Under the pieces are notes generated by a model. The model had not been told where the DNA came from. It saw nothing but the letters and a program-made list of their open reading frames with translations, and ran no database searches. A stretch of DNA of 64,000 bases, from assembly GCF_963853765.1 (NCBI RefSeq), contig NC_088860.1, positions 16,244,001 to 16,308,000 on the forward strand, written 5' to 3'. This stretch comes from Magallana gigas. Its lineage: Eukaryota. Below are positions 5,215 to 55,900 of the stretch, in pieces; position 1 is the stretch's first letter, and each line of letters begins with the position of its first letter. The translations under genes and the position numbers were made by a program.

Positions 5215-5350
5215 ATTGACCAATCAATTCACACCGTCTCCTCAAAAATTGAGAAACTATTCACGCTTTCTAATTAGCCATCCGTGAAATACTACTGACA
5301 GTTTGAGTAGAGCTCCGCCCCTATCCGAGATTTAAACGTTACAGATCAGT
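5215..5350 (+). promoter_or_regulatory. Probable nanos proximal promoter
   Basis: CCAAT (gaccaatc, about 5219), GC box (ctccgccc, about 5313) and Inr-like TCAGT (5346-5350) just upstream of the ATG. Confidence 0.4.
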
Positions 5351-5375
5351 GAGACAGGGACACTCGAAATGCACG

Positions 5376-14300: not shown

Positions 14301-17300
14301 GTGAAATTCAAACAGTGATGAGATGTGAGCATTCTTCCACAATTATTTCCAATATTTTTTAAAAAGAAATAAGATGAACTGGCAAAAACCCATTTTCAAT
14401 ATTTATTTAAACCAGAAAATTTTCAGTACTTTTATTATCAACTTTTTAAACTGTGATTATATAACAGATCTAGAGTGTACAATGTTGGTGATAACTGATT
14501 TCTGTTTGACAGTGTCTGAGGAAGCAGTACGAGAGTATGAAGCATTGCAGCAGAAGTATGAGTTGGAGAAGCAGTGTCGTAGTGGAGCGGAGCAGTTTGC
14601 TACAGAGGTATATACATGTACATTTATTATAACTATACATACATTGACCATGGTCTCTCGATGATTGTTGATAATTTGCTATGATTTCCATTCCTAATTT
14701 GTTAGTTAGGGCTATTTGGACCATGGATATCGGCCTAGGTAGCTCACTGGTAGAGCTCCTGACTATAGGGTTGCAGGGGTCCCGGATTTGATTCCCAGTG
14801 CATCCATATATATTTTTTGTTGTATAACAGTATTTATTTGCTCATTCCTCCTTTCTTACTACACTAAGATAAAAATTTCGTTATTGATTGTTTGATAGTT
14901 ATATTGCCTACTTTTGTTCATACCCCCCATAATGTGATCAACTAGCCAAGTGTCAATTCTTCATTACATGTAATAGATTAAATACCCCCACCATATGACT
15001 TACTGACCAGATATCAATACAATGTTCGTATACCTAATTGCATGTGAACAATTGACCAGATATCAATTCCATATTATTTTTCCCCTCTTTGTAACCTATA
15101 GCTATTGGTTACTCTGTCATGCTCCTTACTCTCAGCCGGTTGCAGTTACCTTATTACTGATAACTTTAATACCTTTCAAACTGTGTTGCAGTAAGTTCTT
15201 CACTTTGGGTTTAGATTGAAGCTTTTCTATTTTTGATTTCATTTTGTCACAGATTCGGATTCAGAACGAGGCCATGAAGAAGCAGAGCATGATCTTACTG
15301 ACGGAGGTGGCCTCTGACCCCAAACTGATGCTGGCCCTCCACGAAGTGGAACAGCTCACTCAGGAGCTAGAGACCCAGAAACAGAAATACGAACAGGAGG
15401 TACAGTAGTCATTTGGTAATGTAATCATCTCTTCATGATCAACAATGGAGTCAAGGAGGCTCCATACCTTAGTGTCATTAAATATTTGATGGCATTTTTG
15501 ATGGATAAAGTAAAAAAAACACATATATTCTTGGACAATGTTCCTAATATTCACATTTTTTTCTTTGATAAACATTTTGCACCCTACCCGTTTGATAATA
15601 GATGGGTTTTGTAAATTCACAGAACAGGTGTTTAAGAAGGAATGATGAATCCACAGTAGCTTATTTTCAATATATTAGGAAATACATTATTTTCTAATTA
15701 ATACTGATACATGTAATTATACAGAAGAATATGTTATGATTGATCTCTATGTACCAACTTGCATTAATTTGTATTTCATATTGTTATCCAATTTAGTACC
15801 TGTTCCAGTACTTGCAATGAGCATTACTTAGAATTGAACATTTTTAGGAGACGTAGGCTAACTGGTTTATTTTATTTACCGTAGATCAAAGAGCTGAAGA
15901 AGGCTGCTGAAAATGAGGATAAAATGTTCGAGGAACTAGACAATTCTGCTTACGTGGATGAAATCAGACACCTGGAAGCCAAGGTTAAACAGTTCGAGGA
16001 CCAGTATAACAAACTCCAGGATAGATGTAGGATACATTTTGATAAAAATATCACTGAACAATTATTTTTTTTATATGAACATAAAAAAGGTATTTCATGT
16101 AAATTACGATTTTTTTTTCCACAGACATAGCTTTGGAAGCTCGATTTGAAGAAGCAACACGGCCCCCACCCCCACCCCCTCCTCCCCCACCCCCGTCATT
16201 GACCACAAAGTCAAAAGGGTAGGGTTCAATTCTCAGATTTATGTTATACCCATCTGAATGTATGGAATTTTTTTATTTTGAAAGATGTACTTGCCTGGTC
16301 TATTCTTTTTTTTTATTTTGGGATAATGAAAAACTTTTCGTATTAGTTAATCAAGTGAATTTGAATTTTCAGATTTTTATCCAAATTTAAGAGAGAAAAG
16401 AAAAAACCTACTGGAGGTAACTGCTTTACTGTAAAAAAAACAATTGAATTAATCTTAGTTTGACCAATAATTGGTAATTTATTGATACAGAGTACCAGAT
16501 ACATGTACCGGTATATGTATAATTAGATACATTGTAATTGTACATGTATTGATTTCCTTTGTATTGTACCGGTAGTTGGAATTTTGTATGTTCAAAGATC
16601 GTTCAACATTCTTAAGATTTTTTCACATTTTTATTCAGTACAAAATGTGCCTCAGAATGACACCTTTTCAAAAGCGATGAGTGAAATGATGGAACGCATC
16701 AACAGCGGAAAGCCCTTGACCCCGGGCGCAAGGGCACCACCGCGACGAAGGGTAAATATGAACCCCTTAATTTCACTTTATTAATTTAAAACTGAGAAAC
16801 TTAAAAAATCTGGATGGTTTAGAGATAATTAAATTTGTGTAATTTTATATAAGAATTTATAGTGGATATTATCAATAGTCTGTACTTAAGATTACTGTAG
16901 TAAAAGCTGTCTCTTAACCTGCTTGTGTTCTCCAGATATCTTAATCTTCTTATTAATAAGTATTTATATTACGGTAACCATACATGTTTATATAATTATA
17001 GGGAAATTATAGAGTGGTATGTTGATTACATTGCTCCTTTTGACAATTGTCTGCATTTGCACATATGTAGATATTTTTGTTTTTTTACCTCATGTACCAT
17101 TGATATGGTTTGAGAGAAATAAACATTCATTTTGCTAGTGTCAACCTGCAAAATTCTGACTGTTAAATGGTTAATCTGGCTGTAGGGGTTGTTGGAATTC
17201 ATCTAAATACCATGGTCAGAATACTGGCCAGTACATAGTATTCACCTCCAATTACAAAATAGTTCAATGTGAATAATGTAGAATTTAAATCAATACTCTA

Positions 17301-27975: not shown

Positions 27976-30900
27976 ATGGCGGCAAATTTTGACTGTGTGT
28001 TGATGCATGGACCACCTTTTTCAGTAAATGTCGATTATTTCGTGACTTTTATCATAGAAATTTGAATAGAAATATAGGAATTGAGTCAGTGAACCACTGA
28101 CTGTCATAATTTTACCGACAAAACTTGAGATACTCAGATAATAAACGGTTTAAGTACTGGGCATGCTGCACAGGAGTCGGCAATCTCATGGCTGGGTTTT
28201 TACTTATTTTGACTCTAGGTAATATGTTTTACGGTGCTACCGTTCTGGCGAGCGCAGCAAGAATTACACATACCTTGCACCATTGTCAACCTAGTGTTAT
28301 TTAGGTATCAACGAACGTCAAAGAATTTTTGAGAGAGTATTGCTCTACAATAAGTATGCCAAAGGTACTAATTTTAATGGTTATGATACATACAGCGCAA
28401 CCCCCTACCCCTCCCCCGAGACAAACACAGAGAGAGAGAGAGAGAGACAGCGCCCGGTCCCTGTTTGTAGGTGTGTAATTTCCCCCTTTTAAATTTAATG
28501 GTTTGACTATATGCAATAACTATATAAATTTTTTAACTGTTAATTTGTTCTCTATTGCTTTTCATTTAGTTTAAAATGTCCTATCGTTTATTTTTTCCCT
28601 ACTCATATACTTACCTGCCTTCTGTAAATGCATGCACAATTAGCTTAAAAATGGATCGATATGACAGTAAAGTATGGCTCTTGCTAGTACATGTATATAT
28701 TTATATAATCTCTATATAAAAAAATTAGAAACAAATCATATGTCAATGAGGGAAGTTTCGCAGTCTATACTGAAATAGCTAGTACACGCATTACAGATGT
28801 TTGATCCACCTCTAAATTTATCGCGGGAAATGTAGCGCGAGAGCACTGTGACGTCATCCATGACTTTGTTCATCTTTGTTTACGTATCTCGACTCAAAAC
28901 GAAGGTATAGAAGCAAGTAACAAATCTCTTGAGTCTCGCCAAAGCATATGCGGTACTCTAAACGTGTCTGCAAAGCTCAAGACACTGTAAATTACGAGTT
29001 AAATGTTAGCCATTTTTGGCATACCACCACGGGTGAAAACATTAGAGAGCATTATGGGACGTAGACAAAAAATTTTGTTTGATGAACTGTAGGTTTAGCT
29101 CGTTCTTTTTCCCGCGCACACTGGTTCTTGGAGCTCGCTATTATTTATTGATAAGATTGCCTGTGCATGCTGGGAGTGGAAAAAATAATCTTAACGTGAC
29201 CAGGCCTGGGGGCCATAAAAGTTAGACAAGCTCACTTTAATCTCAGTCTCACTTTTCAACTATATGTTCCTTTGGTTAAAGTGAGACTGAGATCAAAAGT
29301 GAGCTCGCCTAATTTTTCTGGCCCCGGGGCCGGACCCCGGACCTTAAAACTTAGACGAGCTCACTTTTGATCGAAGTCTCACTTTCACAAAAAGGAACAT
29401 ATAGTGTTAAAGTAAACCTGGCCCTGGGGCCATAAAACTTAGACAAGCTCTTTTTTGATCTCAGTCTCATTTTTCCACTATGTTTCTTTCGTAAAATTGA
29501 GACTTAGATCAAAAGTGAGCTCGTCTAAGTTTTATGGCCCCGGGGCCTGAAGTCAAAAGTGAGCTCATTTAAGTTTTTTGGCCCTGGAGCCTGGCTACGC
29601 TCAGGTCAGGGGTCCGTAGAACATCTGTCAATTTTAAAATTATAGTATATATTCTATATTGATGCTTGGAGTAACGTAATTTGTGTAGTCATTTTCATGT
29701 TTAGTATTTCCTGACTAAGATTTCTTTTATACAGTGTTAGTAACACAAATTTACTTTAATATAATATTGCAATTGTACATTGTAGTAGTTGGGGTTATAT
29801 CAGTCTGTATATGGACTGTGGATATCGGCCTTGGTAGCTCAGTTGTAGAGCTCCTGACTAGAGTTGCAGGGGTCCTGGGTTTGATTCCCGGTCCAGCCAT
29901 ATGTTTTCATTGTATTTATATACTCATTTCTCCTTTCCTACTACAGATGGTGCTGTGGCCTTCCTTGTTCAGGCAATTAAATATACATGTAATATATAAG
30001 TCCTGACAAGGTGAACTTGTGTTGTGTCTTCGGTGTCAAAGACTATTTAAGGAGAGAGGAAGGTAGTAGTTGGGGCTATATGAACCGTGGATATAGCCTG
30101 GATAACTCAGTGGTAGAGCTCCTGACTAGAGTTGCAGGGGTCCTGGGTTCGATTCCCAGTCCAGTCATATGTTTTCATTGTATTTATATTTGTATATATA
30201 AATTTTATATACTCATTCCTCCTTTCCTACTACACAATCATATACTGTATATTTTTTTTAGGGAAGTGATGTGTACTATGAAAAACATTTCTCTGGAGAT
30301 CATGTGAAGATTTGTCCAAGGAGCCTATTTTCTTCTAATCAGAATTATGGACTGAGAGACATTGTGCTGAATGTTCAAAGGTGTTTAAAACAGGTACAAC
30401 TTTTCATTTTCAGACATTTTTCTGTTGCAATGTTACAGTTTATGTAGTAAAATGGGGTTTTACAGTGTTAGTGTATGTTCTCCTCAATACCTTTCAATGC
30501 CTGACCTCTGACCCTGGTCAGTCCTTTTACTGGGCGTTTCATGTATGACAGTGCACCCAGCATTACATTAGCAGCCAAACCTAGAGTCCTGTTAGATACA
30601 GTACTAAATGGTCAATGTGCCCCTCCAGGTTTCTACCCACCATACTGCAGCTTTCCAAATCCATGGAACACCATTTATTGTACCATACATTGGTCCATTA
30701 ACATTATGCCCTAGTATGCCATGCCGCCACAATACATTGTATCAGTTTCATGGTTTGTACTTGACCTGATATGATTTATACATGGACAGTAAATTCCATG
30801 TTCAAAGTCCATGTGTCATGAATATATCTTACCGACTTCCTTTGTGTACTGTAAATGACAAGTTGTAAATAAAACCATGAAAAGTAAAGTTAACATTATA

Positions 30901-33900
30901 AAGTTTTACAATAGAGTTACAAATTTCCTACTGGGTACAAAACCTGATATCAACCAAATGCAATACCTATAAACCATATGCAGTATTGGTTATCAGACCT
31001 GGCCCTGGGGCCACAAAACTTAGATGAGCTCACTTTTGATTGTTCCATTTGTAAAAGTGAGACTTAGATCAAAAGTGAGCTCATCCAAGTTACAGGATGG
31101 TTATGTACCGATTACTAGAAATGTAAGTTTACTAAACTTTAGATGTGAGTTATGTTCTTGCTGTGGCAGTTACTGATACATATACAGTTTGTAACTCAGG
31201 AGCTGTATGATAATTTCAGTAAAAAAAATATAACATCAATTACACTACTGATAAGATTCAGGATACTTATATTTTATTTACTTTTTCAGTTGTTGAAGAA
31301 CAGGACCATATAGAACCAGGGTCATGTCAAACTATATATAAATGATATAGTCATCATTTGTCGGATCTATACTGTCTCTTATTTATAACTAAATATGAAT
31401 TAATAGTATATATATCTTCAATTTATACTGCATCTATAAATCATGTCATTTAGCTATAAAACATGGCAATTAGAGAGGCTCAATAGCAGTATTCGTCAGG
31501 AAAGAGGTGAAGATTATGTGGACTATGTGAGGAGGAATACATCAACAAGAAGATTAGTTGATCCAGAGAGACTTGTGCATGGTCTGGCCAATCTTAATGA
31601 TGGAACACCTCACAGAACAATCTGCAACGTTATTCTTCATCAGTATGAACTGGCGAGAGATGTGGGTGATTGGAGATGGATCGAGGCCCTCAGAAGGGAG
31701 TGCAGTACTATTCTGTGTTCAGCGAGATGGGTGGATGACCACCTGCCATCACTGGTTCATGAAGCTCATTCACAGAAAAGAGTACGACCATCAGTCAATG
31801 CATCTTCTGCCACTTCAGCTTCCATGTGTGTGGACATTCATCTTCGTTCTAACCTAGACTTGCAGTTTGAGCGAGAAAACGCTGTTGATGGCAAACACCA
31901 AACTCCATATGTTAACCCAGTGATGGAGGCCTCTGCATACAGACATGGTTTTTCCAATGAACGTCCTGTGTCAACCAGAGAAGATCCATATCTGACCGAG
32001 AACTTTCATTTTGACAAGACTAAGCCAAAGACGACTATAAGTGCTCATATTGTTGAAGCAAATGAAGGCAGTATGGAGATCCCTTCTAAACGAGTACGTC
32101 TTGACTGTGATGATCAAGAACTGACCCAAGAGGTGACGCTGCAGTTTCCATCATCTTTCCAGAGATGTCCGTTTCTAGGATGTGATGTTAGAGAAAAGAA
32201 GATCAAACGGCATGCGCAGAGTAAACACCTTCCAAGGATTTTTAATGATATAAAACCAATACGATCATTGGACGATAAATCCTTATGCCAATTCCAGATG
32301 TCTGCATTGTCATCTCTGGTGAAGAGTGCATTGGGACCAGATGCTGATTTACTATCAGCGGTTGACTACTTGAATTGTTCCAATATTATTCCATCAAACG
32401 CAGTTGTTCATGTTGACACTGCTTCATCCATGCACAGACTCTGTTCGTACCAAGGATGGACGGAACCTTCGGAGGGTTTCAGGTTGTCGCCAATCAACTC
32501 TCCTGCTGTTCTTGTCCATTGGAGATGTTTGGTTGCTTTGATGTCTCTTTTGCAGCCCATGCAATGTGAAGAATTTCGTGTCCATGGGCGTGTTATAACC
32601 GACATGCAGTCTGTTACCAATACTTCAGACATTGGTGGGTCCGATGTGAATACATTGACAGAGGATAAGTTTAAAGCTGTTGATGTTCATTATGGTTCTG
32701 ACTTTGAAATTCCTCATCAATCTGCACCTCATGTAGTAAGTCATTCAAAAACCAATGCCCTTGAAGTACAAGAGTCATATACCTCAAATGTGAATGAAGC
32801 CTTTGATAGCCATTTTCATTTGGACCACACTTGTGCAAGGATATGGGGGCATTATTCACCTTCTGGAAATACGATGGAGGATCTACACTCGGTTATCAAT
32901 CAGAGCAGTTTCCAGCCAAAGTTGAAAGTTAATATTGTAGGAGGTGTTATCAACTACAGTGAGCCTTCAGCACACCCTGAGTTCATTCAAGCTGGAGGAT
33001 CTTGGGGGATAGCTCTTGGTGTACACCCTAAACATGTTAGCGAGCTCACAGCAGAAAAACTCCTTCGTCTGAAGAATTTACTGAATCATCCCAGTGTAGT
33101 GGGTTTAGGTGAAACTGGATTGGATAGGACTGTTCCTGTAAAGCTGTGGAGACAGCAGGAAAAAGTTTTTCGCCAAGTTCTTTCCCTTGTACGTCAAAAC
33201 AAGGTATTGATTCTCCATCTCCGAGGAACTCCAGCAGACCGAATAGGAATAGACGTGCATGCACGGTGTATGCAGATTCTGAAGAAATTTTGTGGATACA
33301 CTCAGCCAATTCATGTCCACTGCTTTACGGGAGATACTGAATTGGTCACGGAATGGATGAGCAACTTCTCTAACGTGTATTTTGGTTTCACTGGTGCTGT
33401 GGAGAACTTTAGTTCTGATCAAGTTGCAGGCCTACAGTCTGTCCCTTTAAACCGGATTCTTTTAGAAACTGATTCCCCTTCCATGCGACCAGGAGGAGGG
33501 AACATCAACACTCCGGCTTTCATTGGGGATGTTGCGAGCCTCGTAGCATCAAAGCTACAGATTCCAGAACATCACCTATTGAAAGAGACTGTTCAAAATG
33601 GTCGTCGATTATATGGCTGTTAGAATATGTTAGAATATGAATGTTTCTGCAGAATTTAAGTCTGGATAATTTCCGACAAAATTCATGCAGAATATCTCTT
33701 GTATATAATTACTACAGTATAGGTCTGAGTGTTGGTTCGACCAAGTAACTTGTATAAATTCTTTAATATCAACTGTACATGTATATTGAACAATTCTTCG
33801 TAAATCTTTACATCATTAATCTTTATAGTCATTAAAATGAAATGGAAAGGAATGAAGTAAAGTAGGGTTTCACACTGTTCATATGTTTCCTCAATACCTC

Positions 33901-36900
33901 TCTATCCCTGACCTCTGACCCTGGTCTACCCCTCACTGGGCATGTAATGTGGTGTCCACTAGAACAGCAGCAGTTCAGACCCCAGCATCCCTGATGTCCA
34001 GACATATTACATACCTATGTTTATCCATGTGTGCATACATTTACATGAATCTATATATTTGCTGGAACCCCTTTTCTTTCTGAGGTAGGATACCAGCTCT
34101 ACATGTATATTTAATATCATGAGTACCTTGTTTTCGTAAACTTGGTTGCACAACATTCATGTTCTGTAGAGTATAGGGTTTACATGTATAGAACATGTGT
34201 ATGTATAGATGCGCTTCTTTGTTTGCATGAATGGGTTTGAAGATAAAAGGATTTTGCCTTAAAGTCAGTTTTTGTAAAGTTTTGAATAGATATACCGGTA
34301 ATTTATGATAAATCTGTATAGACAACTTATTTCAGAAACACATTCATAATTATTTACCAAGCATATTATCTTAACATTAAATTTGTATTAATTATGGTAA
34401 TTATTTATGCTCCTTTTTTTTATTTCTAGCATATTTGATAAGAATAGCAAAGTATGTTAATTAACGGTGGTTTAAATTGTGTTTTTTAGGATCAGAAAGT
34501 TGCTGTGGATGATGACAATGGTACATTTGCGAAAAGATCTTCCTATCTCAAACTTATCCAGAAAAAGGTACTGTATGTTGAGTTATATATAATATTACTG
34601 ATAATTTGAGTTATACAATCATTTCTACTAACTTATTTTAAACAAGTTTGATATTCATTTAGAGCAAAATGAAAAAAAGTACAAATATGTTATATTATTA
34701 TATTCCTATTTCTTCAGAATCTCCTATTCATTGATTTCATTCCATTACATTTCTCAAAATGTAGGCTAAGAACCAAGATGTGTACCAAAGAACCAAAATT
34801 TGGCAATACAGTTCCATAGTGGGTTAAATCAGTATGCTGTGACATACTCCAGCAATGTCGTAAAAATTAGTCAAAGGGTGTCAAGTACCCTTAAAGCCAA
34901 TGTATGAATGATTTCCATTTCCAGTTCCCAGAGAAGACCATAGCTCTGGTCAGTGTTCAGCCTAAATATGGCCAGTCCCAGGTGTTGTGGAACCAAGAAG
35001 TTTGTCTTAACGAGGAGGATGTGACAGTTAGTTATGCAGATATCACATCCTGGTTTGATCCCAAAACAGGCAAAGTGGCCTACAATTCAAGCAAGTTTAT
35101 ATTCATCTATACAAATACCTGTAATAACGTCAGTCGGTTATTGCCATGTTCTGCTAATTGCATCTTTTTTATTGAAATTGATATTTTGTCTTGTGTAAAT
35201 AAATTAATATATTAAAAGGCTTGTTTTACATTCATAGTTCATACCATTGGTATACATGTAGCCTCACAAGGAGGGATTTTATATTTGCATTGTGATTTTG
35301 ACTGCTGTTTAATTACCTATAAATTATAGATGAGGTACCTGATGAAGAGGAAGGATATAAACTATTTCATCATGAAGCACATCTTGAGAACTTTTCAGCC
35401 TTCAAGGTATGGAAATAAATTACATGTATACATTCTAAAGCCTCTTTTTATGACTGTAGTACATGTACATCCCACCCTTGGTCGTGGGGTGTTTTTTTGT
35501 TCTTCGATTTTTTTTTATATGAAACTTGAATCTTTTTTTCCCTCAAAACCTTACATGAAGCCTAGAAATAAAAACTAAACAATTTTGAACATAAATTGAA
35601 GAGAAAATATTGCCAACAAGACTTTACAAATGTAACATCTATAATTATCTTGAGTTATCTTCCTTGTTTCAGTTTGATATTCCAGGTCTGTTGATACAAA
35701 TAGAGAGTATCTACACAAAGTCTGACAATGGACTTAGCCTGAGACATGGGATTAAGGATATTTGTGTTCACTGGAATGAACAGAACCCCATAGGAAGAAT
35801 CATCTTTGTTCAGTTCGGTAGTTATACTTTCAGAGATTTAAGGCAGTATGAGCTGTTATTTATAAATAATCAATTTTACAATAACTTAAGTATTTTCCTT
35901 TAGAATAAGGATATTATAATTACAATAAATGTAATTTAAAGATCACAGATTTAATGTTATATTGATGGAAAACAAGATTTTCATAGTTTTTAATGGAAGG
36001 CTTGAGCAAAAGTGATAATCATATTTTTCTGTTTGTCATGGTGCATGTCCATGATTTATTCAGCAGGTTTTGCTGAAAGAGATAAAACTATAGTTTTATA
36101 GATTTGTTCACTGACAGTATGTGCAACATTTTCTTGTGCATAGTATCGTACATAAAATCATATACTTTTACAAAATGTGGGCTTGTTCATCTCTTTTGAT
36201 AAATAAATATATTTTTAGGAAACAGAGAACCAATGGATGAGATCAGACTTTTACTGACAAAGTTAGCAAAACAGGTAAGGTGAGAATATGCTAAGTTTGC
36301 TTAGACTAATAATTTACAGCTATCTTTTTTGTTTACCAGACGTAAAATTTTACAGGTAACCCCAGTCCTATGATGAGGAGAACAAATATAATGCAGTTAA
36401 AAGATGAATGTATAATATATGTATCATTGGATCTCTTACAATATTAAAAGAAGGTATAAACTATAAAAATACATATACAACTTGACGCTTTACTATAAAC
36501 TCATAAGTTTGTCTATAGTACATCACATTGATACTATTCTTTTTGGGTTTTATCTATCACTATAATCTTGATTTTTACATAAGGCAATGATATGAACAGT
36601 TTCAGGAGAACATTTGATTTTGTAGCTGGATTTCCCATTTTACCTGTTCCACATCTCAGAGCAGACTGCTGCCACTCCTTATTCGGAACCTCCCAATCCA
36701 GGAATTCTTGCATTTTTACAGAAGAGACACTGTCTGTTTCTGCACAGCACAGTAAGTGGTTTAATGTTGAAAGAGAGATGTAAACAGTAGGTAATCCATT
36801 GATAGACAGTATCTATAGGTTTACTATTGATAGCGGTACCATGTACTTTCAATAGGTTTTCTTACTGCCCACTCTATTCAATTTACATGAATGAAATGAA

Positions 36901-39900
36901 AAATTGTTTTAACCTGAAGGATTTTGTTCTTGAACTTCTGCTTTTTTCCAGAAAACCTTGTACATCTACCAGACTCAGAATCACATGAAGATGGCTCAAG
37001 CTGCTGGTGTCTACTGTGTTAAGGTACCTTAGGATGTTTTCTCTATCTTTTCTAGCTTTGTTAAATAAGATTTTTTCTCTAGCTGTGTTAAATGAGATGT
37101 TTTCTCTAATCCTTAGCTTTGTTAATAAGATGTTTTCTCTAGCACTGTTAAATACTTTAAAAAAAAATTACAATTTTTAAAATCTATTTCATGAAAAAAA
37201 TGCTTTGTCTTTAGCAACAAGAATGTTTTAGGCAAAAATAAATGTACGTGTATTTAAAATCATTGCAGATCACACAGGTTCTTCATAACACAGCATTGGT
37301 AAGTGTAATAATTTTTTCTGATTTACTGAATCTTTAAAAAAAATTCTGCTTATATGTTGCTTTGAACTGGTCTCTTTCGATAGTTGAGTAAAACATCACA
37401 GTACATTAATTTTGTTCTGACCTTAGGTCAACGGCAGTCATGTGATCACACGATCACCCGTCCCGGATTTCCTCAGAACCATGGAGATTTTACCAAAGTC
37501 CCAGACACCTTCTAGGATCCCCAGTCTGCCTTGTGTTACACAGGACAGAGATTGGTTGAACAGTTACATGAGATGTGAGCTTCCCCAGGGAAGGAAGGAA
37601 TTCATTTTTGCCCAAGATATTGATACTGTTTTGAGGTATGCCAAAGTCATATTGTACATACTGGTATACATATAAATATAAAATTGTAAAGTTTCAGGTA
37701 CTGTATTTTATAATTGTTTTAGCTACCAAGAGCTTTATCAGAGTTGTGTAACCAAACTGACAAAGCCTGAATGTATCTACACTCAAAGCAGAGGTGGAGA
37801 GGAGGAGCCCAAGGTAGACAATAACACATCACTGAATAGCTCCACCAGAAAGCTGCCATCTTGGATGTTGGGAAAGGAAGAGGCCACGCCAACCAAACTG
37901 TCACTGGACAGGACTGATAGTTCCAGCTCTACAGATGGACTCGGCAGGTACCTGTAGAGGGTTTACTGAAACAATGTATGAATGGAAAGGGGGGGGGGGG
38001 CATAGGACACAAAATTTAATTTTTTATTCATATAGACCAGAAGATAGAAAAATCTTTTATTTTTGTTAATTATCAAGTTTTTTGTAAGACGTACATTTAT
38101 TTGAATATTTATGATTGATGGGAGTTGATTTAAATCAACTCTCCTATGCACTTACTTGGGCAAAGCAAAAGTGAAACAGTGTTTGGACCTAAGCACAAAT
38201 CAATACAGCTGACAACACTTAGTTCTTAAAAATAATCTATAAATTCGATGCTATGTATTCTGAAGCATTGTTTTTCAAGAAAACTTATTTATTAATACCA
38301 TGAAAATAGTAAGATTTTAAATTGTACAAACAGTTTAGATATTTTTTAAAGTCGTATGATTCCTACGCTAGAGTTCAATGTAGTCTTGTTCAACCAGACA
38401 CTTGGCTGTCTCCGTTAACATTCTAGCCTAAGTCACGCAAGCCGTTTGACTCCCCACTCAAACGTTTGTTGTAGAAAGTATTTACAAACGTCAAGGTGAA
38501 CTAGACTAATAATATCCAACAAAACAGAGTCTCTCTTCCTTGTCGGAGATAAATGGAGACAGCCGAGCGTTTGGTTGAACAAGACAAGAGTTCAATCTTG
38601 CCTGGATCCATACAATTTCTCAGAAATATTTCGATTACTGATACTTCTTGCCATGCAAAATCACATCATTGATTTTGAATAAATGATAATCGATAAAATC
38701 AACTCCCATCAGTACTTCAGTACTTTGATATATTTACATTTGTTGATACATTGTTACAGAAGATGGAATTTTTTATTTTAAGAATGATGAATTTAAATTT
38801 TAAGATTTAACTAGTACATGATGCAAGAGGTGAAGCTAATCGATTTATTTTTTTAAGGCAAACATTTTATATAATGAATGAGGAAGAACTTCTAGAAGTT
38901 GCCAAAGACGTTTTGAAGCAGGTAAAAGTTATATGAATATTAGCTTTGTTTTTCATATTCAATTACTGGAAATCGTGAACCTCAGTATTCTGTTGTCATC
39001 AAAATAAATTAATTCAATACAAGATGTTTAAACATACAAATTACAGGCAGGAAAGAACACAGTTCTGAGATATGTTTGTGCAGAGTCTGACATTGGCAAT
39101 AAAACATGGAATAAGAATGGTAAAAATAAGATTGACCCAAAATCCTACAAGCATCAGAATCTCAATGTAAAAGGGAAATCGGCCATTGAAGAGCAGGAGA
39201 GTGACAAGCCTGGCCCAAGTGGATGGAAGCCTAGGAGGGGATCAGGGTTGAAGCCCATTGATAAATCAGAGTTGGACAGACCACAGCAAAAGAGGAGGGG
39301 TGCTGGCAGCAAATGTACCTTACTGGACGACCTGATGGGGGAGACAGGGGTTAGGAAGGCCAGCCCTTGCAAAACTAGGTGAGGGTAAAGATATTCATCT
39401 GTTGCCCTATTGGGCGTGTATTTTCTTGATTTCCAGGCCAAACATATTGTATAGTTTTATAAATTATGACTATTTTTTTGTTGTGTTTGTATTTTATGAA
39501 GAGCCCGGAAACTAGCTTTAATAACGTTTATTTAATATTTGACCTTTAATACCTCTAGATATCAACCTAAGAATAAAGAGGAAGAGAAGGAAAGCCATAT
39601 GTCATCATCAGCTTCAAAATTCAAACCCACAAGTAAGAGGGGTGTCAAAAAAACTCTTGACTTTTTGGAAAAGGGTGATGATCAATCCACATCAATTGGA
39701 TTAAAAACCATGAGTGGTGCCTCAAAAGAGACAGCGTTAAGGGACCTAAGTGAGATATGTGTAAGAGGCAGCTCAGAGGAAATTCTCCCAGATTCCCTAG
39801 AACCTTATCCTTCTGATCTGTTTCCAAGCACACGTGTTAGTTCAAACGAAACTAGAAGAAGGACAGTTGGATTTAAGGACTCTGAAAAATCACCACGGAC

Positions 39901-40048
39901 AGTGAATCCGCCGGTCAAAGACTCAAAAAAGAGGACATCCGACTCTGATGAAAGACAAACACGTAAAGTTAGAAACACAGGTGTGAAAAGTGAGCAGATC
40001 CCATCAAATAAACCCGACTTGTCTGTTTTAGATGAGATATTTTTCTGA
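27976..40048 (+). CDS. Pseudo-polynucleotide kinase/phosphatase fused to a CYREN/MRI-like C-terminal module, 15 exons, about 749 aa
   Basis: Exons: 27976-28023, 30262-30393, 34490-34567, 34925-35090 (GC donor), 35330-35406, 35673-35817, 36219-36274, 36626-36751, 36952-37023, 37269-37298, 37427-37635, 37723-37947, 38858-38921, 39047-39378, 39559-40048. Phases consistent, 2250 nt. Motifs: HGPPFSGSDVYYEKHF (P-loop-like), KVAVDDDNG, FDIPGLLI, EPPNPGIL, MAQAAGV (HAD-like), RKLPSWML, TFYIMNEEELLEVA, LSVLDEIFF-stop. Exon 1 is inferred from its P-loop alignment and phase. Confidence 0.78.
29201..29595. repeat. Cluster of palindromic GGCCCCGGGGCC-ended MITE units
   Basis: Repeated foldback units GGCCATAAAACTTAGACGAGCTCACTTTTGATCTCAGTCTCAC and their reverse complements; another partial copy at 30994-31090. 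Confidence 0.7.
29781..30234 (+). mobile_element. TRIM with tRNA-derived LTRs (Helenus/TRIMp3-like)
   Basis: LTR1 29781-29945 and LTR2 30062-30234 (TGTAGTAG...CTACTACA, roughly 90% alike). PBS TGGTGCTGTGGCC at 29948-29960, PPT AAGGAGAGAGGAA at 30049-30061, 116-bp non-coding interior. Each LTR has a tRNA-like A/B-box segment (29827-29899, 30096-30167). Confidence 0.88.
30443..30560 (+). repeat. LTR-like direct repeat, 5' copy (partner at 33853)
   Basis: Begins TGTAGTAAA; shares TCCTCAATACCT, CCTGACCTCTGACCCTGGTC and ACTGGGC with the 33853 copy. Confidence 0.65.
31443..33623 (+). CDS. Intronless TatD-family nuclease with N-terminal extension and C2H2-like zinc finger, 726 aa, nested in an intron
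   Basis: TatD motifs FDSHFHLD, LGVHP, GETGLD, LHLRG, VHCFTG, LETDSP and NTPAFI. Finger CPFLGC...RHAQSKH. TATA-like TATATAAA at 31335-31342 and ATTAAA near 33830. Confidence 0.9.
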   Translation: MSFSYKTWQLERLNSSIRQERGEDYVDYVRRNTSTRRLVDPERLVHGLANLNDGTPHRTICNVILHQYELARDVGDWRWIEALRRECSTILCSARWVDDHLPSLVHEAHSQKRVRPSVNASSATSASMCVDIHLRSNLDLQFERENAVDGKHQTPYVNPVMEASAYRHGFSNERPVSTREDPYLTENFHFDKTKPKTTISAHIVEANEGSMEIPSKRVRLDCDDQELTQEVTLQFPSSFQRCPFLGCDVREKKIKRHAQSKHLPRIFNDIKPIRSLDDKSLCQFQMSALSSLVKSALGPDADLLSAVDYLNCSNIIPSNAVVHVDTASSMHRLCSYQGWTEPSEGFRLSPINSPAVLVHWRCLVALMSLLQPMQCEEFRVHGRVITDMQSVTNTSDIGGSDVNTLTEDKFKAVDVHYGSDFEIPHQSAPHVVSHSKTNALEVQESYTSNVNEAFDSHFHLDHTCARIWGHYSPSGNTMEDLHSVINQSSFQPKLKVNIVGGVINYSEPSAHPEFIQAGGSWGIALGVHPKHVSELTAEKLLRLKNLLNHPSVVGLGETGLDRTVPVKLWRQQEKVFRQVLSLVRQNKVLILHLRGTPADRIGIDVHARCMQILKKFCGYTQPIHVHCFTGDTELVTEWMSNFSNVYFGFTGAVENFSSDQVAGLQSVPLNRILLETDSPSMRPGGGNINTPAFIGDVASLVASKLQIPEHHLLKETVQNGRRLYGC
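33853..33970 (+). repeat. LTR-like direct repeat, 3' copy, preceded by a purine tract
   Basis: GGAAAGGAA (33844-33852) lies immediately before TGAAGTAAA; about 80% similar by eye to the 30443 copy over about 90 bp. Confidence 0.65.
38380..38586. mobile_element. MITE with ~35-bp TIRs and 10-bp TSD (MULE-like)
   Basis: GTCTTGTTCAACCAGACACTTGGCTGTCTCC versus GGAGACAGCCGAGCGTTTGGTTGAACAAGAC; AGAGTTCAAT at 38370-38379 and 38587-38596. Confidence 0.8.
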
Positions 40049-40474: not shown

Positions 40475-43400
40475 TGTAGCAACCTCTAATGATACAACGT
40501 CCACTAATGATATAATGTTGCATTAGTGGTCAGGATGTTGACCACTAATGATATAATTTTATCATTAACGAACAACCTAACCGTCTACTAATGATATAAT
40601 TTCAGATTTATATCACTAGTGGTCAAAAACCGTAACCTCTAATGATATGGGAAAAAAGTTAGAAATAAGTACTATCTTGACCACTAATGATACACATTTG
40701 AACACATTTTCAATTGCATTAGTGGATGGATTTGCAACCTTTAATGATATAATATGATAAAAGATTATATATNNNNNNNNNNNNNNNNNNNNNNNNNNNN
40801 NNNNNNNNNNNNNNNNNNNNNNNNNNNNNNNNNNNNNNNNNNNNNNNNNNNNNNNNNNNNNNNNNNNNNNNNNNNNNNNNNNNNNNNNNNNNNNNNNNNN
40901 NNNNNNNNNNNNNNNNNNNNNNNNNNNNNNNNNNNNNNNNNNNNNNNNNNNNNNNNNNNNNNNNNNNNNNNNNNNNTAACAACAAAAAATATCAATTAAA
41001 GTTGGTTGAATTAAAACTACTTAAACTATAGGGATCATGTCGTTGTAACAAAGAATATTAATCCAAGTTAAGAATTGACACGCGTTTTATTTTTCAACAT
41101 TGATTATTGATTGGGGAGGGGAGAGGTGATGGGGTTGGGTGGGGGGAGGGGACTTTTCTAACGTTGAAAACTGAGACCAAAAGTCGTGAAATGTATACCC
41201 GGATTTCATTTTATCAACGTTGATTATTGATTTTGGATATTTGGGGGGGGGGGGGGCTTTTCTGAACTACAGGTTTTTGTACTGTCCCTGAAATGGAACT
41301 TGCTCTTCGCAATTATTATGTATCTGATAAAAAATTTCAGCTCCATATTTTAATTCCTAATATTGTCCGATATTCATGCCGATATGGATTTTTGTTTCTG
41401 TTTTTTTTTTTGTTTCTTTATTTTCCCGATAGCAAGAGTTTGTTATTAAGACTAAGAACCCTGTCTCTTGTTGTTAAACTGTGTAGATAGAGTTAAAAGG
41501 AATATATGTCAAACAACATCGTCCCAAGCTATGGTCCGGAGTCTGTTTATATATATATACCCCTCTCAATCATGATCGTTCATGTGGGCCGTGGTTTGCT
41601 AAGATTGCCAAACCCATACCGGCCGTTTATGTTATATTTCCGGTAAATCGCTTCAACTTTAATTTATTTTGAGAAGTCATGATAATTAACTGACAGCACA
41701 ATAATGAACAGTTGTCATAGTTTTATCAGACAAGTCGCGATCAGCGATTATTCAATTAATTTAACTTAACAATAACTTTTCTTAAACTTGCAAGATTAAC
41801 AATAATAAATGATGAATAATAAGCTACTGATCTTGACAGAAAAATAATATTGTGTTCAGTACAGATACAAACACTACACAGAAACTTTTTCGTGGGTGTT
41901 TTTAGGGAGTATTGGACATTATTGACGCATTCGCCGGCGTAACGAAGAATCTTGACTCGGGTTGAAATTTGACCAGGCTGATGAAGCTAGCAGCCATTAA
42001 GCAGCCACTAAGCCCGCAGAAGCTAGCAGCCAATAAGGAAATTCATCAAAGTACTGAGAGTACTCGCACAGAAAATTATATTTCACTTAATTATCGACAT
42101 TTTTTAATTAATATCAAAATGATTAATGCTCAATGAAAAATTTGTACGAGCATTGACGACATTCGAAGCAGTAAAGCTCGCCTGGATAAGAGTTATAAAT
42201 GCGTCTTTGTTGGATAGAAATGAAATAAGTCTATACGGGTCATAAGTTATAAAAATAATGTTATCCTTAGTGTAGTCTTATTGATACAAATAGAAAAAAT
42301 ATATGCATCGTATAAAGTGATATTATGATATAAAAGATTGATTATGATATTATGATATAAAAGAATTTTGACCCGGATATCATTTTTCAACGTTGAACAA
42401 TTGATACCAATGTCGTGAAATTTTTCCTGTGTCAGTTTTCAACAGCTTGAAAAATATTTTTCAAACTTCTAATGACATCGACACGTTAAAAACTGACCCT
42501 GTTGAAAATTGACTCCGACTTCAGAGTTTTGAACTGTCTTCGAACAGAAGTGTAACTTGCTCTTCACAGTTTAATTGTACATGTGTGTACTTAAAAGTTT
42601 CGGTTTCAAAACTTCAACTCTTTCATACTATCCGCTATATTTGCCGTCTTCAGTAATTTGACATTTCAAAGGTTGATTTTTCCGACTTCAATTATTTAAG
42701 ATTTCATTAGAATGAAAACGTGGTATGTAGCAACCTCTAATAATACACCGTCCACTAATGATATAATGTTGCATTAGTGGTCGGGATGTTGACCACTAAT
42801 GATAAAATTTTATCAAACCCGGGTCAATTTACAACCCGGGTTAACATTCTTTGTTACACCGACATAATCACCATTGTTGAAGTAGTTTTAATTCAACCGA
42901 CATTAATTCATATTCTTTGCTGTTCTAATATATAATTAGCAAACCCACATATTCAACTGTACAACAGATTAGTGATTCAATTGTGCTACAGACCACAATA
43001 GCAAATAGTCTTATGAATTGGACCTTTTTATGCTAATAAAATCCCGCTAAAAGTTTAACAATAATTTTTTAATATCGTAAAATTGCTTTTCTTCAAATTT
43101 TCTTCAACCTAAAATATTTAGCACAAGTCCTTTTTGATTAAAGCTGACATGAATTCATTAAAAACATTTGGTCGCCATATTAGTTCGATCGCTCCTCTAC
43201 TGCCACTGGGGTATATATACCGGTTGAGAAAGTTACGGTCGGTTGCTTTCCGAGCGAGGCATTCACGTTGCACGGACTTCAAAATGCATGAACTACACAT
43301 TGTAGTAAAATGTAGTAATAAAGAAAACAACAATCAATGAAATACAAAATATATTTATTCTTTGAAAGGATGTCCAAGGTGTGCGTATTATTTTGCACAG

Positions 43401-52910: not shown

Positions 52911-55900
52911 TTAAAGGACTGTATCAAAAATTGCCATTCCTTTTGTTATGTTTTCGTCCTAAAATGAAAAAAAGACAAAAAATGAAATGGTTCAGGTATT
53001 TTGATTCTTGATCGAAGTTAGGCTGGCTAAACGTACACAAAAGGATTGTTATAAAAAAGTTGAACATATAAAATCACATAACTGTTTTACTAGATTTTGG
53101 TGCCATTTTGAATTAGGTAGGTATTTGATTCATTGCATTAGATATTTGATAAACCTAAGATAAACGGCTGTCTCTTGAATATTGATTGCGTCGAAATGAA
53201 GTTGTAGCAAGCATTGGAGATGCTAAGATGAGTTAGGAAGCAATTAGAGACCGCAATAGCGGCGACCAGAGATATTTAATCTCGCATTCATATTTTCATA
53301 TTTCAAAATTCAACCTCCATTTAAAAAAAACAATATGAGAGAGAGAGAAGAGAGAGATCGAGATCGTTTTCAGATCCCTTGTATTCCACGAAAGGCAAGA
53401 AAAGGAAGTAAAAAAAGATTAAACATCAATAAGGAGTTTCCAGTGACAAAATACTCGCGCCTTGGTGGTATTTATCACAATCAAAGCATTGATATCGATC
53501 CTTGAGGTTCTAAGTGTTGCTGGCATCATCAGGCAGCGCTTCCGACAGTCTCTCTATCTAGCCATGAATCTAATTCTTTCTCGGTCGAAAGGACTCTATA
53601 ATTATTATTAATGAGATTTTAAATCTTATCTTAAATCTTAGTTAGATCCTTTGGTTACTTTTTTGTACACTGCAGAGAAAAGACGGGGGGGAGGGGAGGG
53701 GGGGGGGGGCTGAAAAGGGACTTCGCTGAAACAAAATCCGTTTATTTTTACACGATACAGCATATACATGTATGTATATATTGTATACATCTCGCGGGAT
53801 TGGGTTGGCTTATACCAAGAACGTCATGGGTTTTAATTTGAATTTAGGGAAATTTGAAAATCTCACTTCTTTAAATATTTATAGAAAAAACGGATATTAA
53901 ACAGGAATGGATATCGCGAGTCAATCCCATACCTTTATCTATATGTACATCTATAGATCAATCCGGAAATTGGAAAAGCACTTTCGCCTCTTGAGACCAT
54001 TAATAAAACCCCACTATAAACCAGTTTTTCGATAACCATTATAGAAAAGCAGAATTTTAAAATTCTAAATCATATATACATAGCTTGTTTAAAAAAAAAC
54101 CCATAGTACAACGTATTAATAATTTATTTCTGTGATTTGATTGTCACGCATTTTTTTTTTCATTTGATACAGGGAATGCAAGTTGTTATTCTGAACATGA
54201 GCCGCACATATTGTAAATTCAAGGAAAAAAAATATTTTTAATATCTAAAATGGGTTGCGGTGTGAATTTATGATGATGTTGCAGAGGAGCGCCGCATGAT
54301 CATCTTTATCTTGCTACATGCAGATATATTCGTTGTCGGAGTCGTACCAAATTGACTGACAACCCTTTGTAGATGTGTTTTCCTCATCTTATCAATCAAA
54401 AAATCTTAATTTGATTCCCTTTCTAAAAACCACTATAACCACGATTGCCGTATATATGTGTACATTCCGTCGATTTATTCGTGGTATTCCCCGTCTACAA
54501 GAAATAACCTGTCACTGAAACCCTCATTACTTCCCAGTCTCTCTACACAGACCCCCGCAATCATTCCCTTGCCCTCAAGCGTTCTCTGTCTCTTACAACC
54601 CATTAAATAATGTATAGTGTTACCAACATCGACGGAAGAATTCCGGGATTATACAACACTCTACCATTCACTGTAGCAGCGTGTTCGCTTAACACGATGT
54701 TATTTTTACTATACAAGCTCTGGGAAGATACAACATACTACCATTCACTGTAGCAGCGTGTTCGCTTAACACGATGTTATTTTTACTATACAAGCTCTGG
54801 GACGATACAACACACTACCATTCACTGTAGCAGCGTGTTCGCTTTACACGATGTTATTTATACTAGTATATACAAGTCTTTCTATATACATACCCTACGA
54901 CATGTCTCCATAAACTCGTCAAACGTAATCACGCCGTCACGATTGATATCCATTTTCTACAAAATAAGCATATCATCAACACAGCTCAGCGGGAGTATTA
55001 ATGTCCTGAGTGCCGGGAGCTAATGTAACACTCGGTCATTTGCATTACTTCCTGTCACCGGCAGAAGGATAATCGGAAGCTCCATCTGAATCGCTGGGAT
55101 CAGATTACAGAGAGAAAAAAGCAACAATGTGTGGGAGTGGGGAAATAATGTACGTAGAAACTGGTAATTTGAAAAACAAAATAATTATTTAATTGACCAT
55201 CCACATTCTTGTCTAAATTTCATTCATATAAAAAATTATAATATACACGATTTCTATTTCGATAAAACAAAGAATATACATGTATATTGACACTGCATAA
55301 TATTATATTAGATAAAATTGTTTTGTACCACGTAGCACAGAGCAGTGTTTTGTGTACACAAAAATTGAATAGAACTCACGTGAAATACTCTTTCCACGTG
55401 TTCTTTGGTGGTGTTTTCGTCGACCATCGGTTCGGAGAATCGGCCCATCATCTCGTAGATGGCCGACACAATGTCTGTCATCTCATCCTTGGTGATGAAG
55501 CCGTCGCCATTGATGTCGTACAAATTGAAAGCCCACTGCAGTCTCTCCTGGAGAGTTCCTCTGGATAATACTGATAAGCCCATCACGAACTCCTGTAAAA
55601 ACATTAAGAGATACATTCGATTAGTATTCTTGATATTGAAATCGAAGTAACTGAGGTCTTGTTTGACTATGAGCAAACGGTCAATGGAAAGTGCATGATA
55701 ATTGTAATATTTCAATAATGTAACAATACAATAATTTTCAAGCGAGTTTAACAATGAACGCTTAGATTTCTAACCAGAGACGTTATCTAATATACAAATT
55801 AAAGCACAAATTTCCATTCTTTTAGTTTAAAAACGGCCACAAAAGTCTATTTCTTCTTGCAAAGGAAAATTTAGATAGACTCGCTTTGAATTGACGTTTG

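What the first reader, a model, noticed from the sequence alone, without database searches (positions are those of the whole stretch)
27976..37298. Doubly degenerate polynucleotide kinase/phosphatase in phage T4 (kinase-first) order
Seen: the exon 1/2 junction gives HGPPFSGSDVYYEKHF, aligning without gaps to remembered PNKP VGFPGAGKSTFLKKHL but with the Walker A Lys-Ser replaced. It continues KQDQKVAVDDDNGTFAKRSSYL (PNKP [22 protein letters not shown]). The next domain is HAD-IIIA-like: FDIPGLLI (DxD second Asp lost), EPPNPGIL (catalytic Lys lost), LYIYQ...MAQAAGV (GD lost). Known: animal PNKP is FHA-phosphatase-kinase, whereas T4 Pnk is kinase-phosphatase. Inference: a pseudoenzyme that may bind DNA/RNA ends without processing them; with the Ku-binding tail it could act as an end-protection or scaffold factor.
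Basis: partly seen in the sequence, partly recalled or inferred. Interest (0 to 1): 0.75.

Follow-up and report, generated by a model that had tools for sequence, protein, structure and literature searches.

The report
Dead PNK-like enzyme with Ku-binding tail
An oyster gene encodes a protein whose front half has the fold of a DNA-end kinase/phosphatase but lacks the catalytic residues. Its tail carries the same three short motifs, in the same order, as the vertebrate DNA-repair adaptor MRI/CYREN, so it is probably a Ku-tethered scaffold at broken DNA ends rather than an enzyme.

Summary

An AlphaFold model of the Saccostrea echinata orthologue (residues 1-410) has pLDDT 82 and pTM 0.82. Foldseek puts mammalian PNKP first (E 3e-5). 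T4 Pnk, bacterial Pnkp1, phage Pnk-like proteins and baculovirus Nrk1 align over both domains in kinase-first order. The second domain alone matches capless HAD-IIIA phosphatases.

In the window protein the Walker A motif is GPPFSGSD, and all four HAD motifs are lost. The HAD motifs are dead in every mollusc orthologue found. Walker A is intact (GKS) in Solemya and Haliotis.

Both domains are under purifying selection (dN/dS about 0.14-0.15 between two Saccostrea species), so this is a pseudoenzyme, not a pseudogene.

New here: the tail matches published human MRI/CYREN features in order:
- A-KBM (RKLPSWM)
- the TVYxMN strand plus helix (multimerisation and ERCC6L2-binding element)
- a C-terminal ...EIFF motif

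All relatives found are molluscan and uncharacterised.

The parts
27976..40048 (+). Whole coding region of the gene: 15 exons, 749 aa. Exons: 27976-28023, 30262-30393, 34490-34567, 34925-35090, 35330-35406, 35673-35817, 36219-36274, 36626-36751, 36952-37023, 37269-37298, 37427-37635, 37723-37947, 38858-38921, 39047-39378, 39559-40048 (includes the stop codon).
   Evidence: tblastn of orthologues P0010 and P0003 on the window. Splice sites and an open 2250-nt CDS. Same exon pattern in Saccostrea loci L002 and L003.
27976..35090 (+). Exons 1-4: PNK-type P-loop kinase-like domain (about aa 1-134).
   Evidence: AF2 model of orthologue P0003. Foldseek top hits are mouse PNKP at E 3e-5, fungal and Clostridium polynucleotide kinases. 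Pfam AAA_33 at E 1.1e-5 in Solemya. dN/dS 0.14.
28006..30270 (+). Degenerate Walker A motif HGPPFSGSD, split by intron 1 (28006-28023 + 30262-30270). Lys is replaced by Ser and Ser/Thr by Asp.
   Evidence: Orthologues: Solemya GPPFSGKS and Haliotis GPPCSGKS (intact), Pecten GPKYCGRN.
34496..34519 (+). KVAVDDDN: strand with the conserved acidic pair. It aligns to the VVID.TN strand of PNK-type kinases.
   Evidence: HMMER alignments to C. thermocellum Pnkp kinase and 9drz. D-D is invariant in the family.
35673..37298 (+). Exons 6-10: HAD-IIIA-like domain (about aa 168-310), catalytically degenerate.
   Evidence: Domain-only AF2 model. Foldseek: 2o2x at E 2.8e-4; GmhB, HisB-N and mouse PNKP phosphatase at probability 0.96-1.0. 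dN/dS 0.15.
35673..35696 (+). FDIPGLLI: remnant of HAD motif I (DxDxT). The second Asp is replaced by Pro. Non-oyster orthologues have Glu in place of the first Asp.
36686..36730 (+). EPPNPGILAFLQKRH: position of HAD motif III, with the Lys replaced by Pro. PG(I/L)LA(F/Y)LQ..H is the most conserved block of the family.
   Evidence: Invariant columns.
36958..37011 (+). LYIYQTQNHMKMAQAAGV: position of HAD motif IV, with the acidic residues replaced. Y, Y and H are invariant in the family.
37427..37800 (+). Exon 11 and the start of exon 12: conserved small beta-hairpin/helix subdomain after the HAD domain (about aa 311-401).
   Evidence: AF2 secondary structure with pLDDT 84-94 for residues 350-390 of P0003. 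Conserved LP.GR and YQ.LY.
37847..37870 (+). RKLPSWML: APLF/MRI-type Ku-binding motif (A-KBM).
   Evidence: R.LP.WM is invariant in all ten family members. It fits the core R-x-x-P-x-W (PMC4831024) and human MRI R11/P14/W16, with Met at the next position in most species.
38859..39052 (+). QTFYIMNEEELLEVAKDVLKQAG: strand plus amphipathic helix, almost all encoded by the 64-nt exon 13 (38858-38921; the last two residues are in exon 14, 39047-39052). It matches the human MRI multimerisation and ERCC6L2-HEBO-binding element.
   Evidence: Family consensus is TVYVMTE.EL.E.A..(V/I)LKQ.G. Human MRI has T52 V53 Y54, 54-YCMN-57, V64, L66, I68, L69. The element lies 32 residues after the KBM Trp, against 38 in human.
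40010..40045 (+). KPDLSVLDEIFF followed by the stop codon: basic patch plus a C-terminal aromatic motif, like the MRI XLF-like motif.
   Evidence: The family C-termini are ...(L/F)S(V/I)LDEIF(F/S/K). The human MRI-X peptide is VLKYVREIFFS.

Best explanation
The gene encodes a mollusc-wide nuclear adaptor made of two parts.

The N-terminal roughly 400 residues fold like a kinase-first polynucleotide kinase/3'-phosphatase: a PNK-type P-loop kinase, then a capless HAD-IIIA domain, then a small extra subdomain. In the oyster in the window this part cannot catalyse either reaction. The Walker A Lys and Ser/Thr are gone, there is no Asp at either candidate position of the general base, and all four HAD motifs are replaced.

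The C-terminal roughly 350 residues are disordered and carry three motifs in this order:
- an A-type Ku-binding motif;
- a TVYxM(N/T) strand plus helix, equal to the element through which human MRI/CYREN multimerises and binds ERCC6L2;
- a basic patch ending in ...LDEIFF, like MRI's XLF-like motif.

Shown: the gene model, the folds, the loss of catalytic residues, purifying selection, and the motif matches.

Inferred: the tail tethers the protein to Ku80 on a broken DNA end and lets it oligomerise or bridge to partners, as MRI does. The dead PNK-like module, whose former active-site region is the best-conserved part, then acts as a binding module for a DNA terminus or a partner protein. The ancestor was probably a Ku-tethered 5'-kinase with an already dead phosphatase. 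Kinase catalysis was lost later in the oyster and scallop lineages.
For: - Complete ORF and conserved exon structure.
- AF2 model with pLDDT 81.7 and pTM 0.82.
- Foldseek against PDB: mouse PNKP at E 3e-5; Pnkp1 and T4 Pnk aligned over about 330-345 columns at E 1e-4 to 5e-4.
- Foldseek against BFVD: a phage protein and baculovirus Nrk1 over both domains at E 2e-6 to 7e-6.
- Domain 2 alone matches HAD-IIIA enzymes (2o2x, GmhB, HisB-N, PNKP).
- Pfam AAA_33 at E 1.1e-5, 26.2 bits against a cut-off of 27, in Solemya. Sub-threshold PDB profile hits are concentrated on polynucleotide kinases.
- Catalytic residues across ten family members.
- dN/dS is 0.14 (kinase-like), 0.15 (HAD-like) and 0.42 (distal tail) between two Saccostrea species.
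- Motif matches to MRI come from papers. In shuffles of the tail, the chance of each motif is 9e-4, 3e-5 and 2e-5.
- A 2.2-kb intronless Logan contig encodes 658 aa of a family member (P0017), so the gene is transcribed and spliced in at least one mollusc.
Against: - Oyster proteins get no Pfam hit at all, and no HAD family hits any member.
- hhalign against T4 Pnk aligns only the P-loop (probability 11%).
- Foldseek two-domain alignments have RMSD of 16-20 A, so the domain orientation differs or is not well predicted.
- The MSA behind the models has only nine sequences.
- No Pfam family hit the tail at E <= 10.
- The word search with the tail profile found only oyster fragments, so homology to vertebrate MRI rests on three short motifs chosen after seeing them.
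- No binding or localisation data exist.
Confidence: 0.7

Rival explanations
1. The N-terminal module descends from a small-molecule kinase/phosphatase (for example a nucleoside or nicotinamide-riboside kinase fused to a HAD nucleotidase), not from a polynucleotide kinase. The PNKP resemblance would then be the generic similarity among P-loop kinases. The module would bind a nucleotide-like ligand rather than nucleic-acid ends.
For: Among the best two-domain structural matches are baculovirus proteins named Nrk1. PFKFB and deoxycytidine kinase also appear in the PDB list. AAA_33 is a broad family. The best HAD matches are sugar-phosphate and histidinol phosphatases rather than PNKP.
Against: The top PDB hits for the kinase are polynucleotide kinases: mouse PNKP, CthPnkp, and the Mucorales kinases 9drz and 9d8a. 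The fusion to a Ku-binding tail points to DNA ends.
Confidence: 0.15
2. The protein is still an enzyme in oysters and uses non-canonical residues. For example, another Lys or Arg could reach the nucleotide, or the single Asp of FDIPG could act as nucleophile.
For: Strong purifying selection on both domains. The former active-site region of the HAD domain is the most conserved block. Oysters keep the first Asp of motif I.
Against: Walker A lacks both Lys and Ser/Thr. HAD motifs I (second Asp), III and IV are all replaced, and motif II is degenerate too. The first Asp is Glu in the other orthologues, so it is not conserved as a nucleophile.
Confidence: 0.07
3. The tail motifs are independently evolved short linear motifs. 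The protein binds Ku as APLF, WRN and others do, but is not related to MRI/CYREN.
For: The KBM core R-x-x-P-x-W occurs in more than 600 human proteins. Short motifs evolve convergently. No profile or Pfam link to MRI was obtained.
Against: Three motifs occur in the same order, with similar KBM-to-strand spacing (32 against 38 residues). They include the unusual TVYxMN strand followed by a helix with matching hydrophobic positions, and the ...EIFF C-terminus.
Confidence: 0.3

Closest known systems
Mammalian PNKP (polynucleotide kinase 3'-phosphatase)
   Same: It is the best structural match of the kinase-like domain (E 3e-5). Its phosphatase domain also matches domain 2 (probability 0.96). Both are linked to NHEJ and DNA ends.
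   Different: PNKP is FHA-phosphatase-kinase and is active. Here the order is kinase-phosphatase, there is no FHA domain, the catalytic residues are lost, and recruitment would be through a Ku-binding motif rather than an FHA-phosphopeptide contact.
Phage T4 Pnk, bacterial Pnkp1, phage Pnk-like proteins and baculovirus Nrk1
   Same: They share the two-domain order, a P-loop kinase followed by a phosphatase. Structural alignments span both domains.
   Different: Those proteins are about 300 aa and have no tail, and T4 Pnk and Pnkp1 are known active enzymes. Sequence similarity to T4 Pnk is limited to the P-loop. The domain orientation differs (RMSD 16-20 A).
Vertebrate MRI/CYREN
   Same: It has the A-KBM (R..P.W, Met next in most species), the TVYCMN strand plus helix (multimerisation and ERCC6L2-HEBO binding) and the C-terminal ...EIFFS motif, in the same order and with similar spacing.
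   Different: MRI is a 157-aa disordered microprotein that begins at the KBM. The mollusc protein is 650-770 aa and has a folded roughly 400-aa pseudo-PNK module in front.
APLF
   Same: It is a Ku80-vWA-binding adaptor with a closely similar KBM (...LPTWM...).
   Different: APLF has FHA, PBZ zinc fingers and an acidic histone-chaperone tail. Pfam detects none of these here.

Membership tests
PNK-type P-loop polynucleotide 5'-kinase (Pfam AAA_33; PNKP and T4 Pnk kinase domains) | P-loop kinase fold closest to polynucleotide kinases | tested here: met
   Foldseek: mouse PNKP at E 3e-5 and probability 1.0; 9drz, 9d8a and 4gp6 at probability 1.0.
PNK-type P-loop polynucleotide 5'-kinase (Pfam AAA_33; PNKP and T4 Pnk kinase domains) | Walker A motif GxxxxGK(S/T) | tested here: not met
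   The window has GPPFSGSD. The motif is met in the Solemya (GPPFSGKS) and Haliotis (GPPCSGKS) orthologues.
PNK-type P-loop polynucleotide 5'-kinase (Pfam AAA_33; PNKP and T4 Pnk kinase domains) | General-base Asp after strand 2 (T4 D35; numbering from memory) | tested here: inconclusive
   The CthPnkp alignments put the SSDF Asp at a Val column or in a gap of the family. The 9drz alignment puts DDLG on (N)PD(L/F)G of Solemya and Haliotis. Under either alignment the window protein has no Asp there (Pro or Asn).
PNK-type P-loop polynucleotide 5'-kinase (Pfam AAA_33; PNKP and T4 Pnk kinase domains) | Score above the Pfam gathering threshold | tested here: not met
   The best score is 26.2 bits against a cut-off of 27 (Solemya). 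Oyster proteins get no hit.
HAD phosphatase, subfamily IIIA (PNKP/T4 Pnk 3'-phosphatase, GmhB, HisB-N) | Capless Rossmannoid HAD fold | tested here: met
   Foldseek of the domain-2 model: 2o2x at E 2.8e-4; GmhB, HisB-N and PNKP at probability 0.96-1.0.
HAD phosphatase, subfamily IIIA (PNKP/T4 Pnk 3'-phosphatase, GmhB, HisB-N) | Motif I DxDx(T/V), with nucleophile and general acid/base | tested here: not met
   Oysters have FDIPG. The other orthologues have (F/L)E(V/L)P(A/S).
HAD phosphatase, subfamily IIIA (PNKP/T4 Pnk 3'-phosphatase, GmhB, HisB-N) | Motif III Lys and motif IV acidic pair | tested here: not met
   EPPNPG has Pro where the Lys is expected. Motif IV reads Y.Y....H...A..AG, with no acidic residues. 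The positions were assigned from the order of secondary-structure elements, not from a structural superposition.
MRI/CYREN | A-type Ku-binding motif R-x-x-P-x-W | tested here: met
   RKLPSWM; R.LP.WM is invariant in the family.
MRI/CYREN | Central TVYCMN strand plus helix (MuD / ERCC6L2-binding element) | tested here: met
   The window has TFYIMNEEELLEVAKDVL and the family consensus is TVYVMTE.EL.E.A..(V/I)L. Of the published human positions, Y54, M56, N57, V64 and L69 match exactly in the window, V53 (Phe) and I68 (Val) are conservative, and L66 is Lys. Motif level only.
MRI/CYREN | C-terminal XLF-like motif (basic patch, then an aromatic residue at the C-terminus) | tested here: met
   ...KPDLSVLDEIFF followed by the stop codon, against human VLKYVREIFFS.
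MRI/CYREN | Significant sequence or profile similarity to vertebrate MRI proteins | tested here: inconclusive
   A Pfam scan of the tails gave nothing at E <= 10. The word search with the tail profile returned only oyster fragments. No vertebrate MRI sequence could be fetched, so no profile-profile test was run.
APLF | FHA domain and PBZ zinc fingers | tested here: not met
   No FHA or PBZ Pfam hit in any of the ten members.

The most novel reading that the evidence does not exclude
The vertebrate microprotein MRI/CYREN is the surviving tail of an ancient, larger NHEJ factor. That factor's N-terminus was a Ku-tethered, kinase-first polynucleotide kinase/phosphatase-like module, and molluscs still carry the full-length form. 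Its kinase P-loop is intact in some lineages (Solemya, Haliotis) and dead in others (oysters, scallop). This would give MRI an evolutionary origin in DNA-end processing. It also predicts that the mollusc protein bridges Ku, ERCC6L2-like partners and DNA termini.
Probability: 0.4. Interest if true: 0.75.

Novelty: new variant of a known kind. Interest (0 to 1): 0.6.

Why it matters
Pseudoenzymes derived from DNA-end-processing enzymes are rare. A dead PNK-like module fused to a Ku-binding tail would be a new kind of NHEJ accessory factor.

If the tail is truly homologous to MRI/CYREN, this family is the first clue to where that vertebrate 'disordered microprotein' came from. It also offers natural comparisons for working out what the module does: Walker A intact in Solemya and Haliotis, dead in oysters and scallop.

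It is also a clean example of a metazoan kinase-first Pnk architecture, which is otherwise known from phages, bacteria and baculoviruses.

Tried and rejected
- Pfam scans of single exons gave nothing.
- Pfam and PDB sequence searches with the S. echinata protein alone gave nothing meaningful.
- hhalign of the family profile against T4 Pnk (fetched from NC_000866) aligned only the P-loop.
- The tail-profile word search meant to reach vertebrate MRI returned only oyster genomic fragments.
- The PDB profile search with the tail gave only chance hits to ribosomal L39 and designed repeat proteins.
- Pattern scans of viral contigs and of prokaryotic genomes for relatives of the N-terminal module found none.
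- My first splice model had exon 6 joined directly to an acceptor at 36659, and exon 4 ending at 35095. I dropped it once orthologues showed two further exons and a GC donor.
- A pseudogene or gene-model artefact is rejected: the ORF is complete, the exons are conserved and dN/dS is low.
- The window is not human. It is oyster DNA, and its protein is about 96% identical to a Magallana gigas UniRef entry.
- No human sequence was given to any tool. Human MRI residues were only read from papers.
- The N run at 40773-40976 was left untouched.

Full report
**What is there**

The window is AT-rich invertebrate DNA (GC about 34%), not human. On the + strand between 27976 and 40048 lies a complete gene of 15 coding exons encoding 749 aa. 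I built the model by eye for the first exons. I then corrected it with orthologues.

A search of the 57-aa exon 4 against the representative library returned a 730-aa Saccostrea echinata protein, P0003. tblastn of it and of a Magallana gigas entry, P0010 (about 96% identical to the window), located every exon. All junctions are GT-AG except a GC donor after exon 4. The same 15 exons occur in S. echinata and S. cucullata genomic loci.

**Check of the observation**

Neither error affects the quoted motifs.

The start codon is preceded by an in-frame stop. The N-terminus MAA... is shared from oysters to abalone, so a different first exon that would restore the P-loop is unlikely.

**Family**

Word searches found relatives only in molluscs, all named 'uncharacterized':
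- Oysters: Saccostrea, Magallana, Ostrea
- Pecten maximus
- Solemya velum
- Two Haliotis species
- One transcript-like Logan contig

Pattern scans of viral and prokaryotic collections found nothing.

**Fold**

No Pfam family hits the oyster proteins. The Solemya kinase region reaches AAA_33 at E 1.1e-5, 26.2 bits against a cut-off of 27. Sub-threshold PDB profile hits are concentrated on polynucleotide kinases: C. thermocellum Pnkp, the Mucorales kinase 9drz and mammalian PNKP.

An AlphaFold2 model of P0003 residues 1-410, built on a nine-sequence alignment, has mean pLDDT 81.7 and pTM 0.82. Foldseek results for it:
- Against PDB, mouse PNKP ranks first (E 3e-5, about 161 columns). Pnkp1 (4xru) and T4 Pnk (2ia5, 1rc8) follow, aligned over about 330-345 columns, that is both domains in kinase-first order.
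- Against viral models, the best hits are a phage protein, baculovirus Nrk1 and phage Pnk proteins, over both domains at E 2e-6 to 4e-5.

A model of the second domain alone matches capless HAD-IIIA enzymes best: 2o2x at E 2.8e-4, then GmhB and HisB-N, with mouse PNKP phosphatase at probability 0.96.

There is no special tie to T4, however. hhalign against T4 Pnk aligns only the P-loop, and the two-domain superpositions have large RMSD.

**Catalytic residues**

Walker A differs between lineages:

| Lineage | Walker A | State |
|---|---|---|
| Oysters | GPPFSGSD | lost |
| Pecten | GPKYCGRN | lost |
| Solemya | GPPFSGKS | intact |
| Haliotis | GPPCSGKS | intact |

The position of the general-base Asp is ambiguous between two alignments. 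Under either one the window protein lacks it.

The HAD motifs are lost in every member:
- Motif I is (D/E)-(I/V/L)-P.
- Motif III has Pro in place of Lys.
- Motif IV is Y.Y....H, with no acidic residues.

The phosphatase was therefore dead in the common ancestor of these molluscs, while the kinase lost its P-loop later in the oyster and scallop lineages.

The block around the former motif III, PG(I/L)LA(F/Y)LQ..H, is the most conserved part of the protein. That argues for a retained binding function there.

**Selection**

| Region | dN/dS, S. echinata vs S. cucullata |
|---|---|
| Kinase-like domain | 0.14 |
| HAD-like domain | 0.15 |
| Following subdomain | 0.19 |
| KBM-to-helix segment | 0.19 |
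| Distal tail | 0.42 |

This is a conserved pseudoenzyme, not a decaying gene.

**Tail**

Three blocks are invariant or nearly so in an otherwise disordered, Ser- and Lys-rich tail:

1. R.LP.WM (window RKLPSWML, 37847-37870). This fits the A-KBM core R-x-x-P-x-W of APLF, WRN and MRI (PMC4831024) and human MRI R11/P14/W16. The following residue is Met in most species.
2. TVYVMTE.EL.E.A..(V/I)LKQ.G (window QTFYIMNEEELLEVAKDVLKQAG), nearly all encoded by the 64-nt exon 13. Human MRI has T52-V53-Y54, which pack against the ERCC6L2 HEBO domain. It also has a multimerisation domain with strand 54-YCMN-57 and a helix carrying V64, L66, I68 and L69. Counting from the Tyr, the window has M at +2, N at +3, V at +10, V at +14 and L at +15.
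3. A basic patch ending in ...LDEIFF at the C-terminus, against the human MRI XLF-like peptide VLKYVREIFFS.

The order is the same as in MRI, and the KBM-to-strand spacing is 32 residues against 38. In shuffles of the window tail the three motifs arise with frequencies 9e-4, 3e-5 and 2e-5. The motifs were chosen after inspection, so these numbers overstate the significance.

Homology to MRI is therefore an inference from motifs, not a tested result.

**Most likely mechanism**

The protein is probably a Ku-tethered adaptor, working as follows:
- The A-KBM docks on Ku80 vWA.
- The strand-helix mediates self-association or docking to an ERCC6L2-like partner.
- The C-terminal motif provides a second contact, as described for MRI.
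- The dead PNK-like module provides a folded binding surface for a DNA terminus or another repair factor.

All functional steps are inferred.

**Rivals**

Three alternatives remain: a small-molecule kinase/phosphatase ancestry of the module, residual non-canonical catalysis, and convergent evolution of the tail motifs.

**Novelty**

The family is unannotated and the architecture is not described in the papers I could search. It combines known modules in a new way, so I rate it a new variant of a known kind. Interest is moderate to high, mainly because of the possible link to the origin of MRI/CYREN.

Noticed in passing
window 31443-33623 (+), inside intron 2 of the gene: An intronless 726-aa ORF whose C-terminal 270 aa are a TatD-family DNase domain (Pfam E 1.5e-38). 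The N-terminal 450 aa have no Pfam hit. It is flanked by a 39-nt direct repeat (30481-30519 and 33888-33926, 92% identical). The same intron is only about 110 nt in Saccostrea echinata, so this is a lineage-specific insertion, possibly a mobile element or a retrogene.
   Followed up: partly
window 5307-6080 (+): An open frame with a Nanos zinc-finger domain (Pfam zf-nanos, E 2.3e-26). A nanos-like gene lies upstream.
   Followed up: partly
window 55311-55769 (-): An exon with EF-hand calcium-binding motifs (Pfam EF-hand_7 and EF-hand_1, E 2e-7). It looks like a neuronal-calcium-sensor-type gene on the opposite strand.
   Followed up: partly
window 13021-13770: A minisatellite of roughly 15-nt period, open in several frames on both strands, inside the upstream coiled-coil-like gene region.
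   Followed up: no
window 29719-30300 (two copies) and about 14473-14841 (-): A repeated element with a tRNA-like GGTTCGATTCC segment (translation ...SVVELLTRVAGVLG.IP...), probably a tRNA-derived SINE. Two copies sit in intron 1 just upstream of exon 2.
   Followed up: no
window 37916-37939 and 39320-39367: Two further conserved tail motifs. (D/E)S.SST(D/E)G lies between the KBM and the strand-helix. It resembles the acidic Ser/Thr clusters that, once phosphorylated, bind the FHA domains of PNKP, APTX and APLF (from memory, untested). VL.DLM.ETGVRKASP.K is found in the bivalve members other than Solemya.
   Followed up: no
window 35091-35092: The intron after exon 4 uses a GC donor (A|GCAAGT). 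Only this splice gives ...YNSN|EVPDEEEGYK, which matches the Magallana gigas protein.
   Followed up: yes
L002 (Saccostrea echinata) 7739-8790: A tandem repeat of roughly 80 nt in the intron after exon 10 carries copies of the last codons of that exon.
   Followed up: no
window 40773-40976: A run of 204 N about 0.7 kb downstream of the stop codon. It was left as it is.
   Followed up: no
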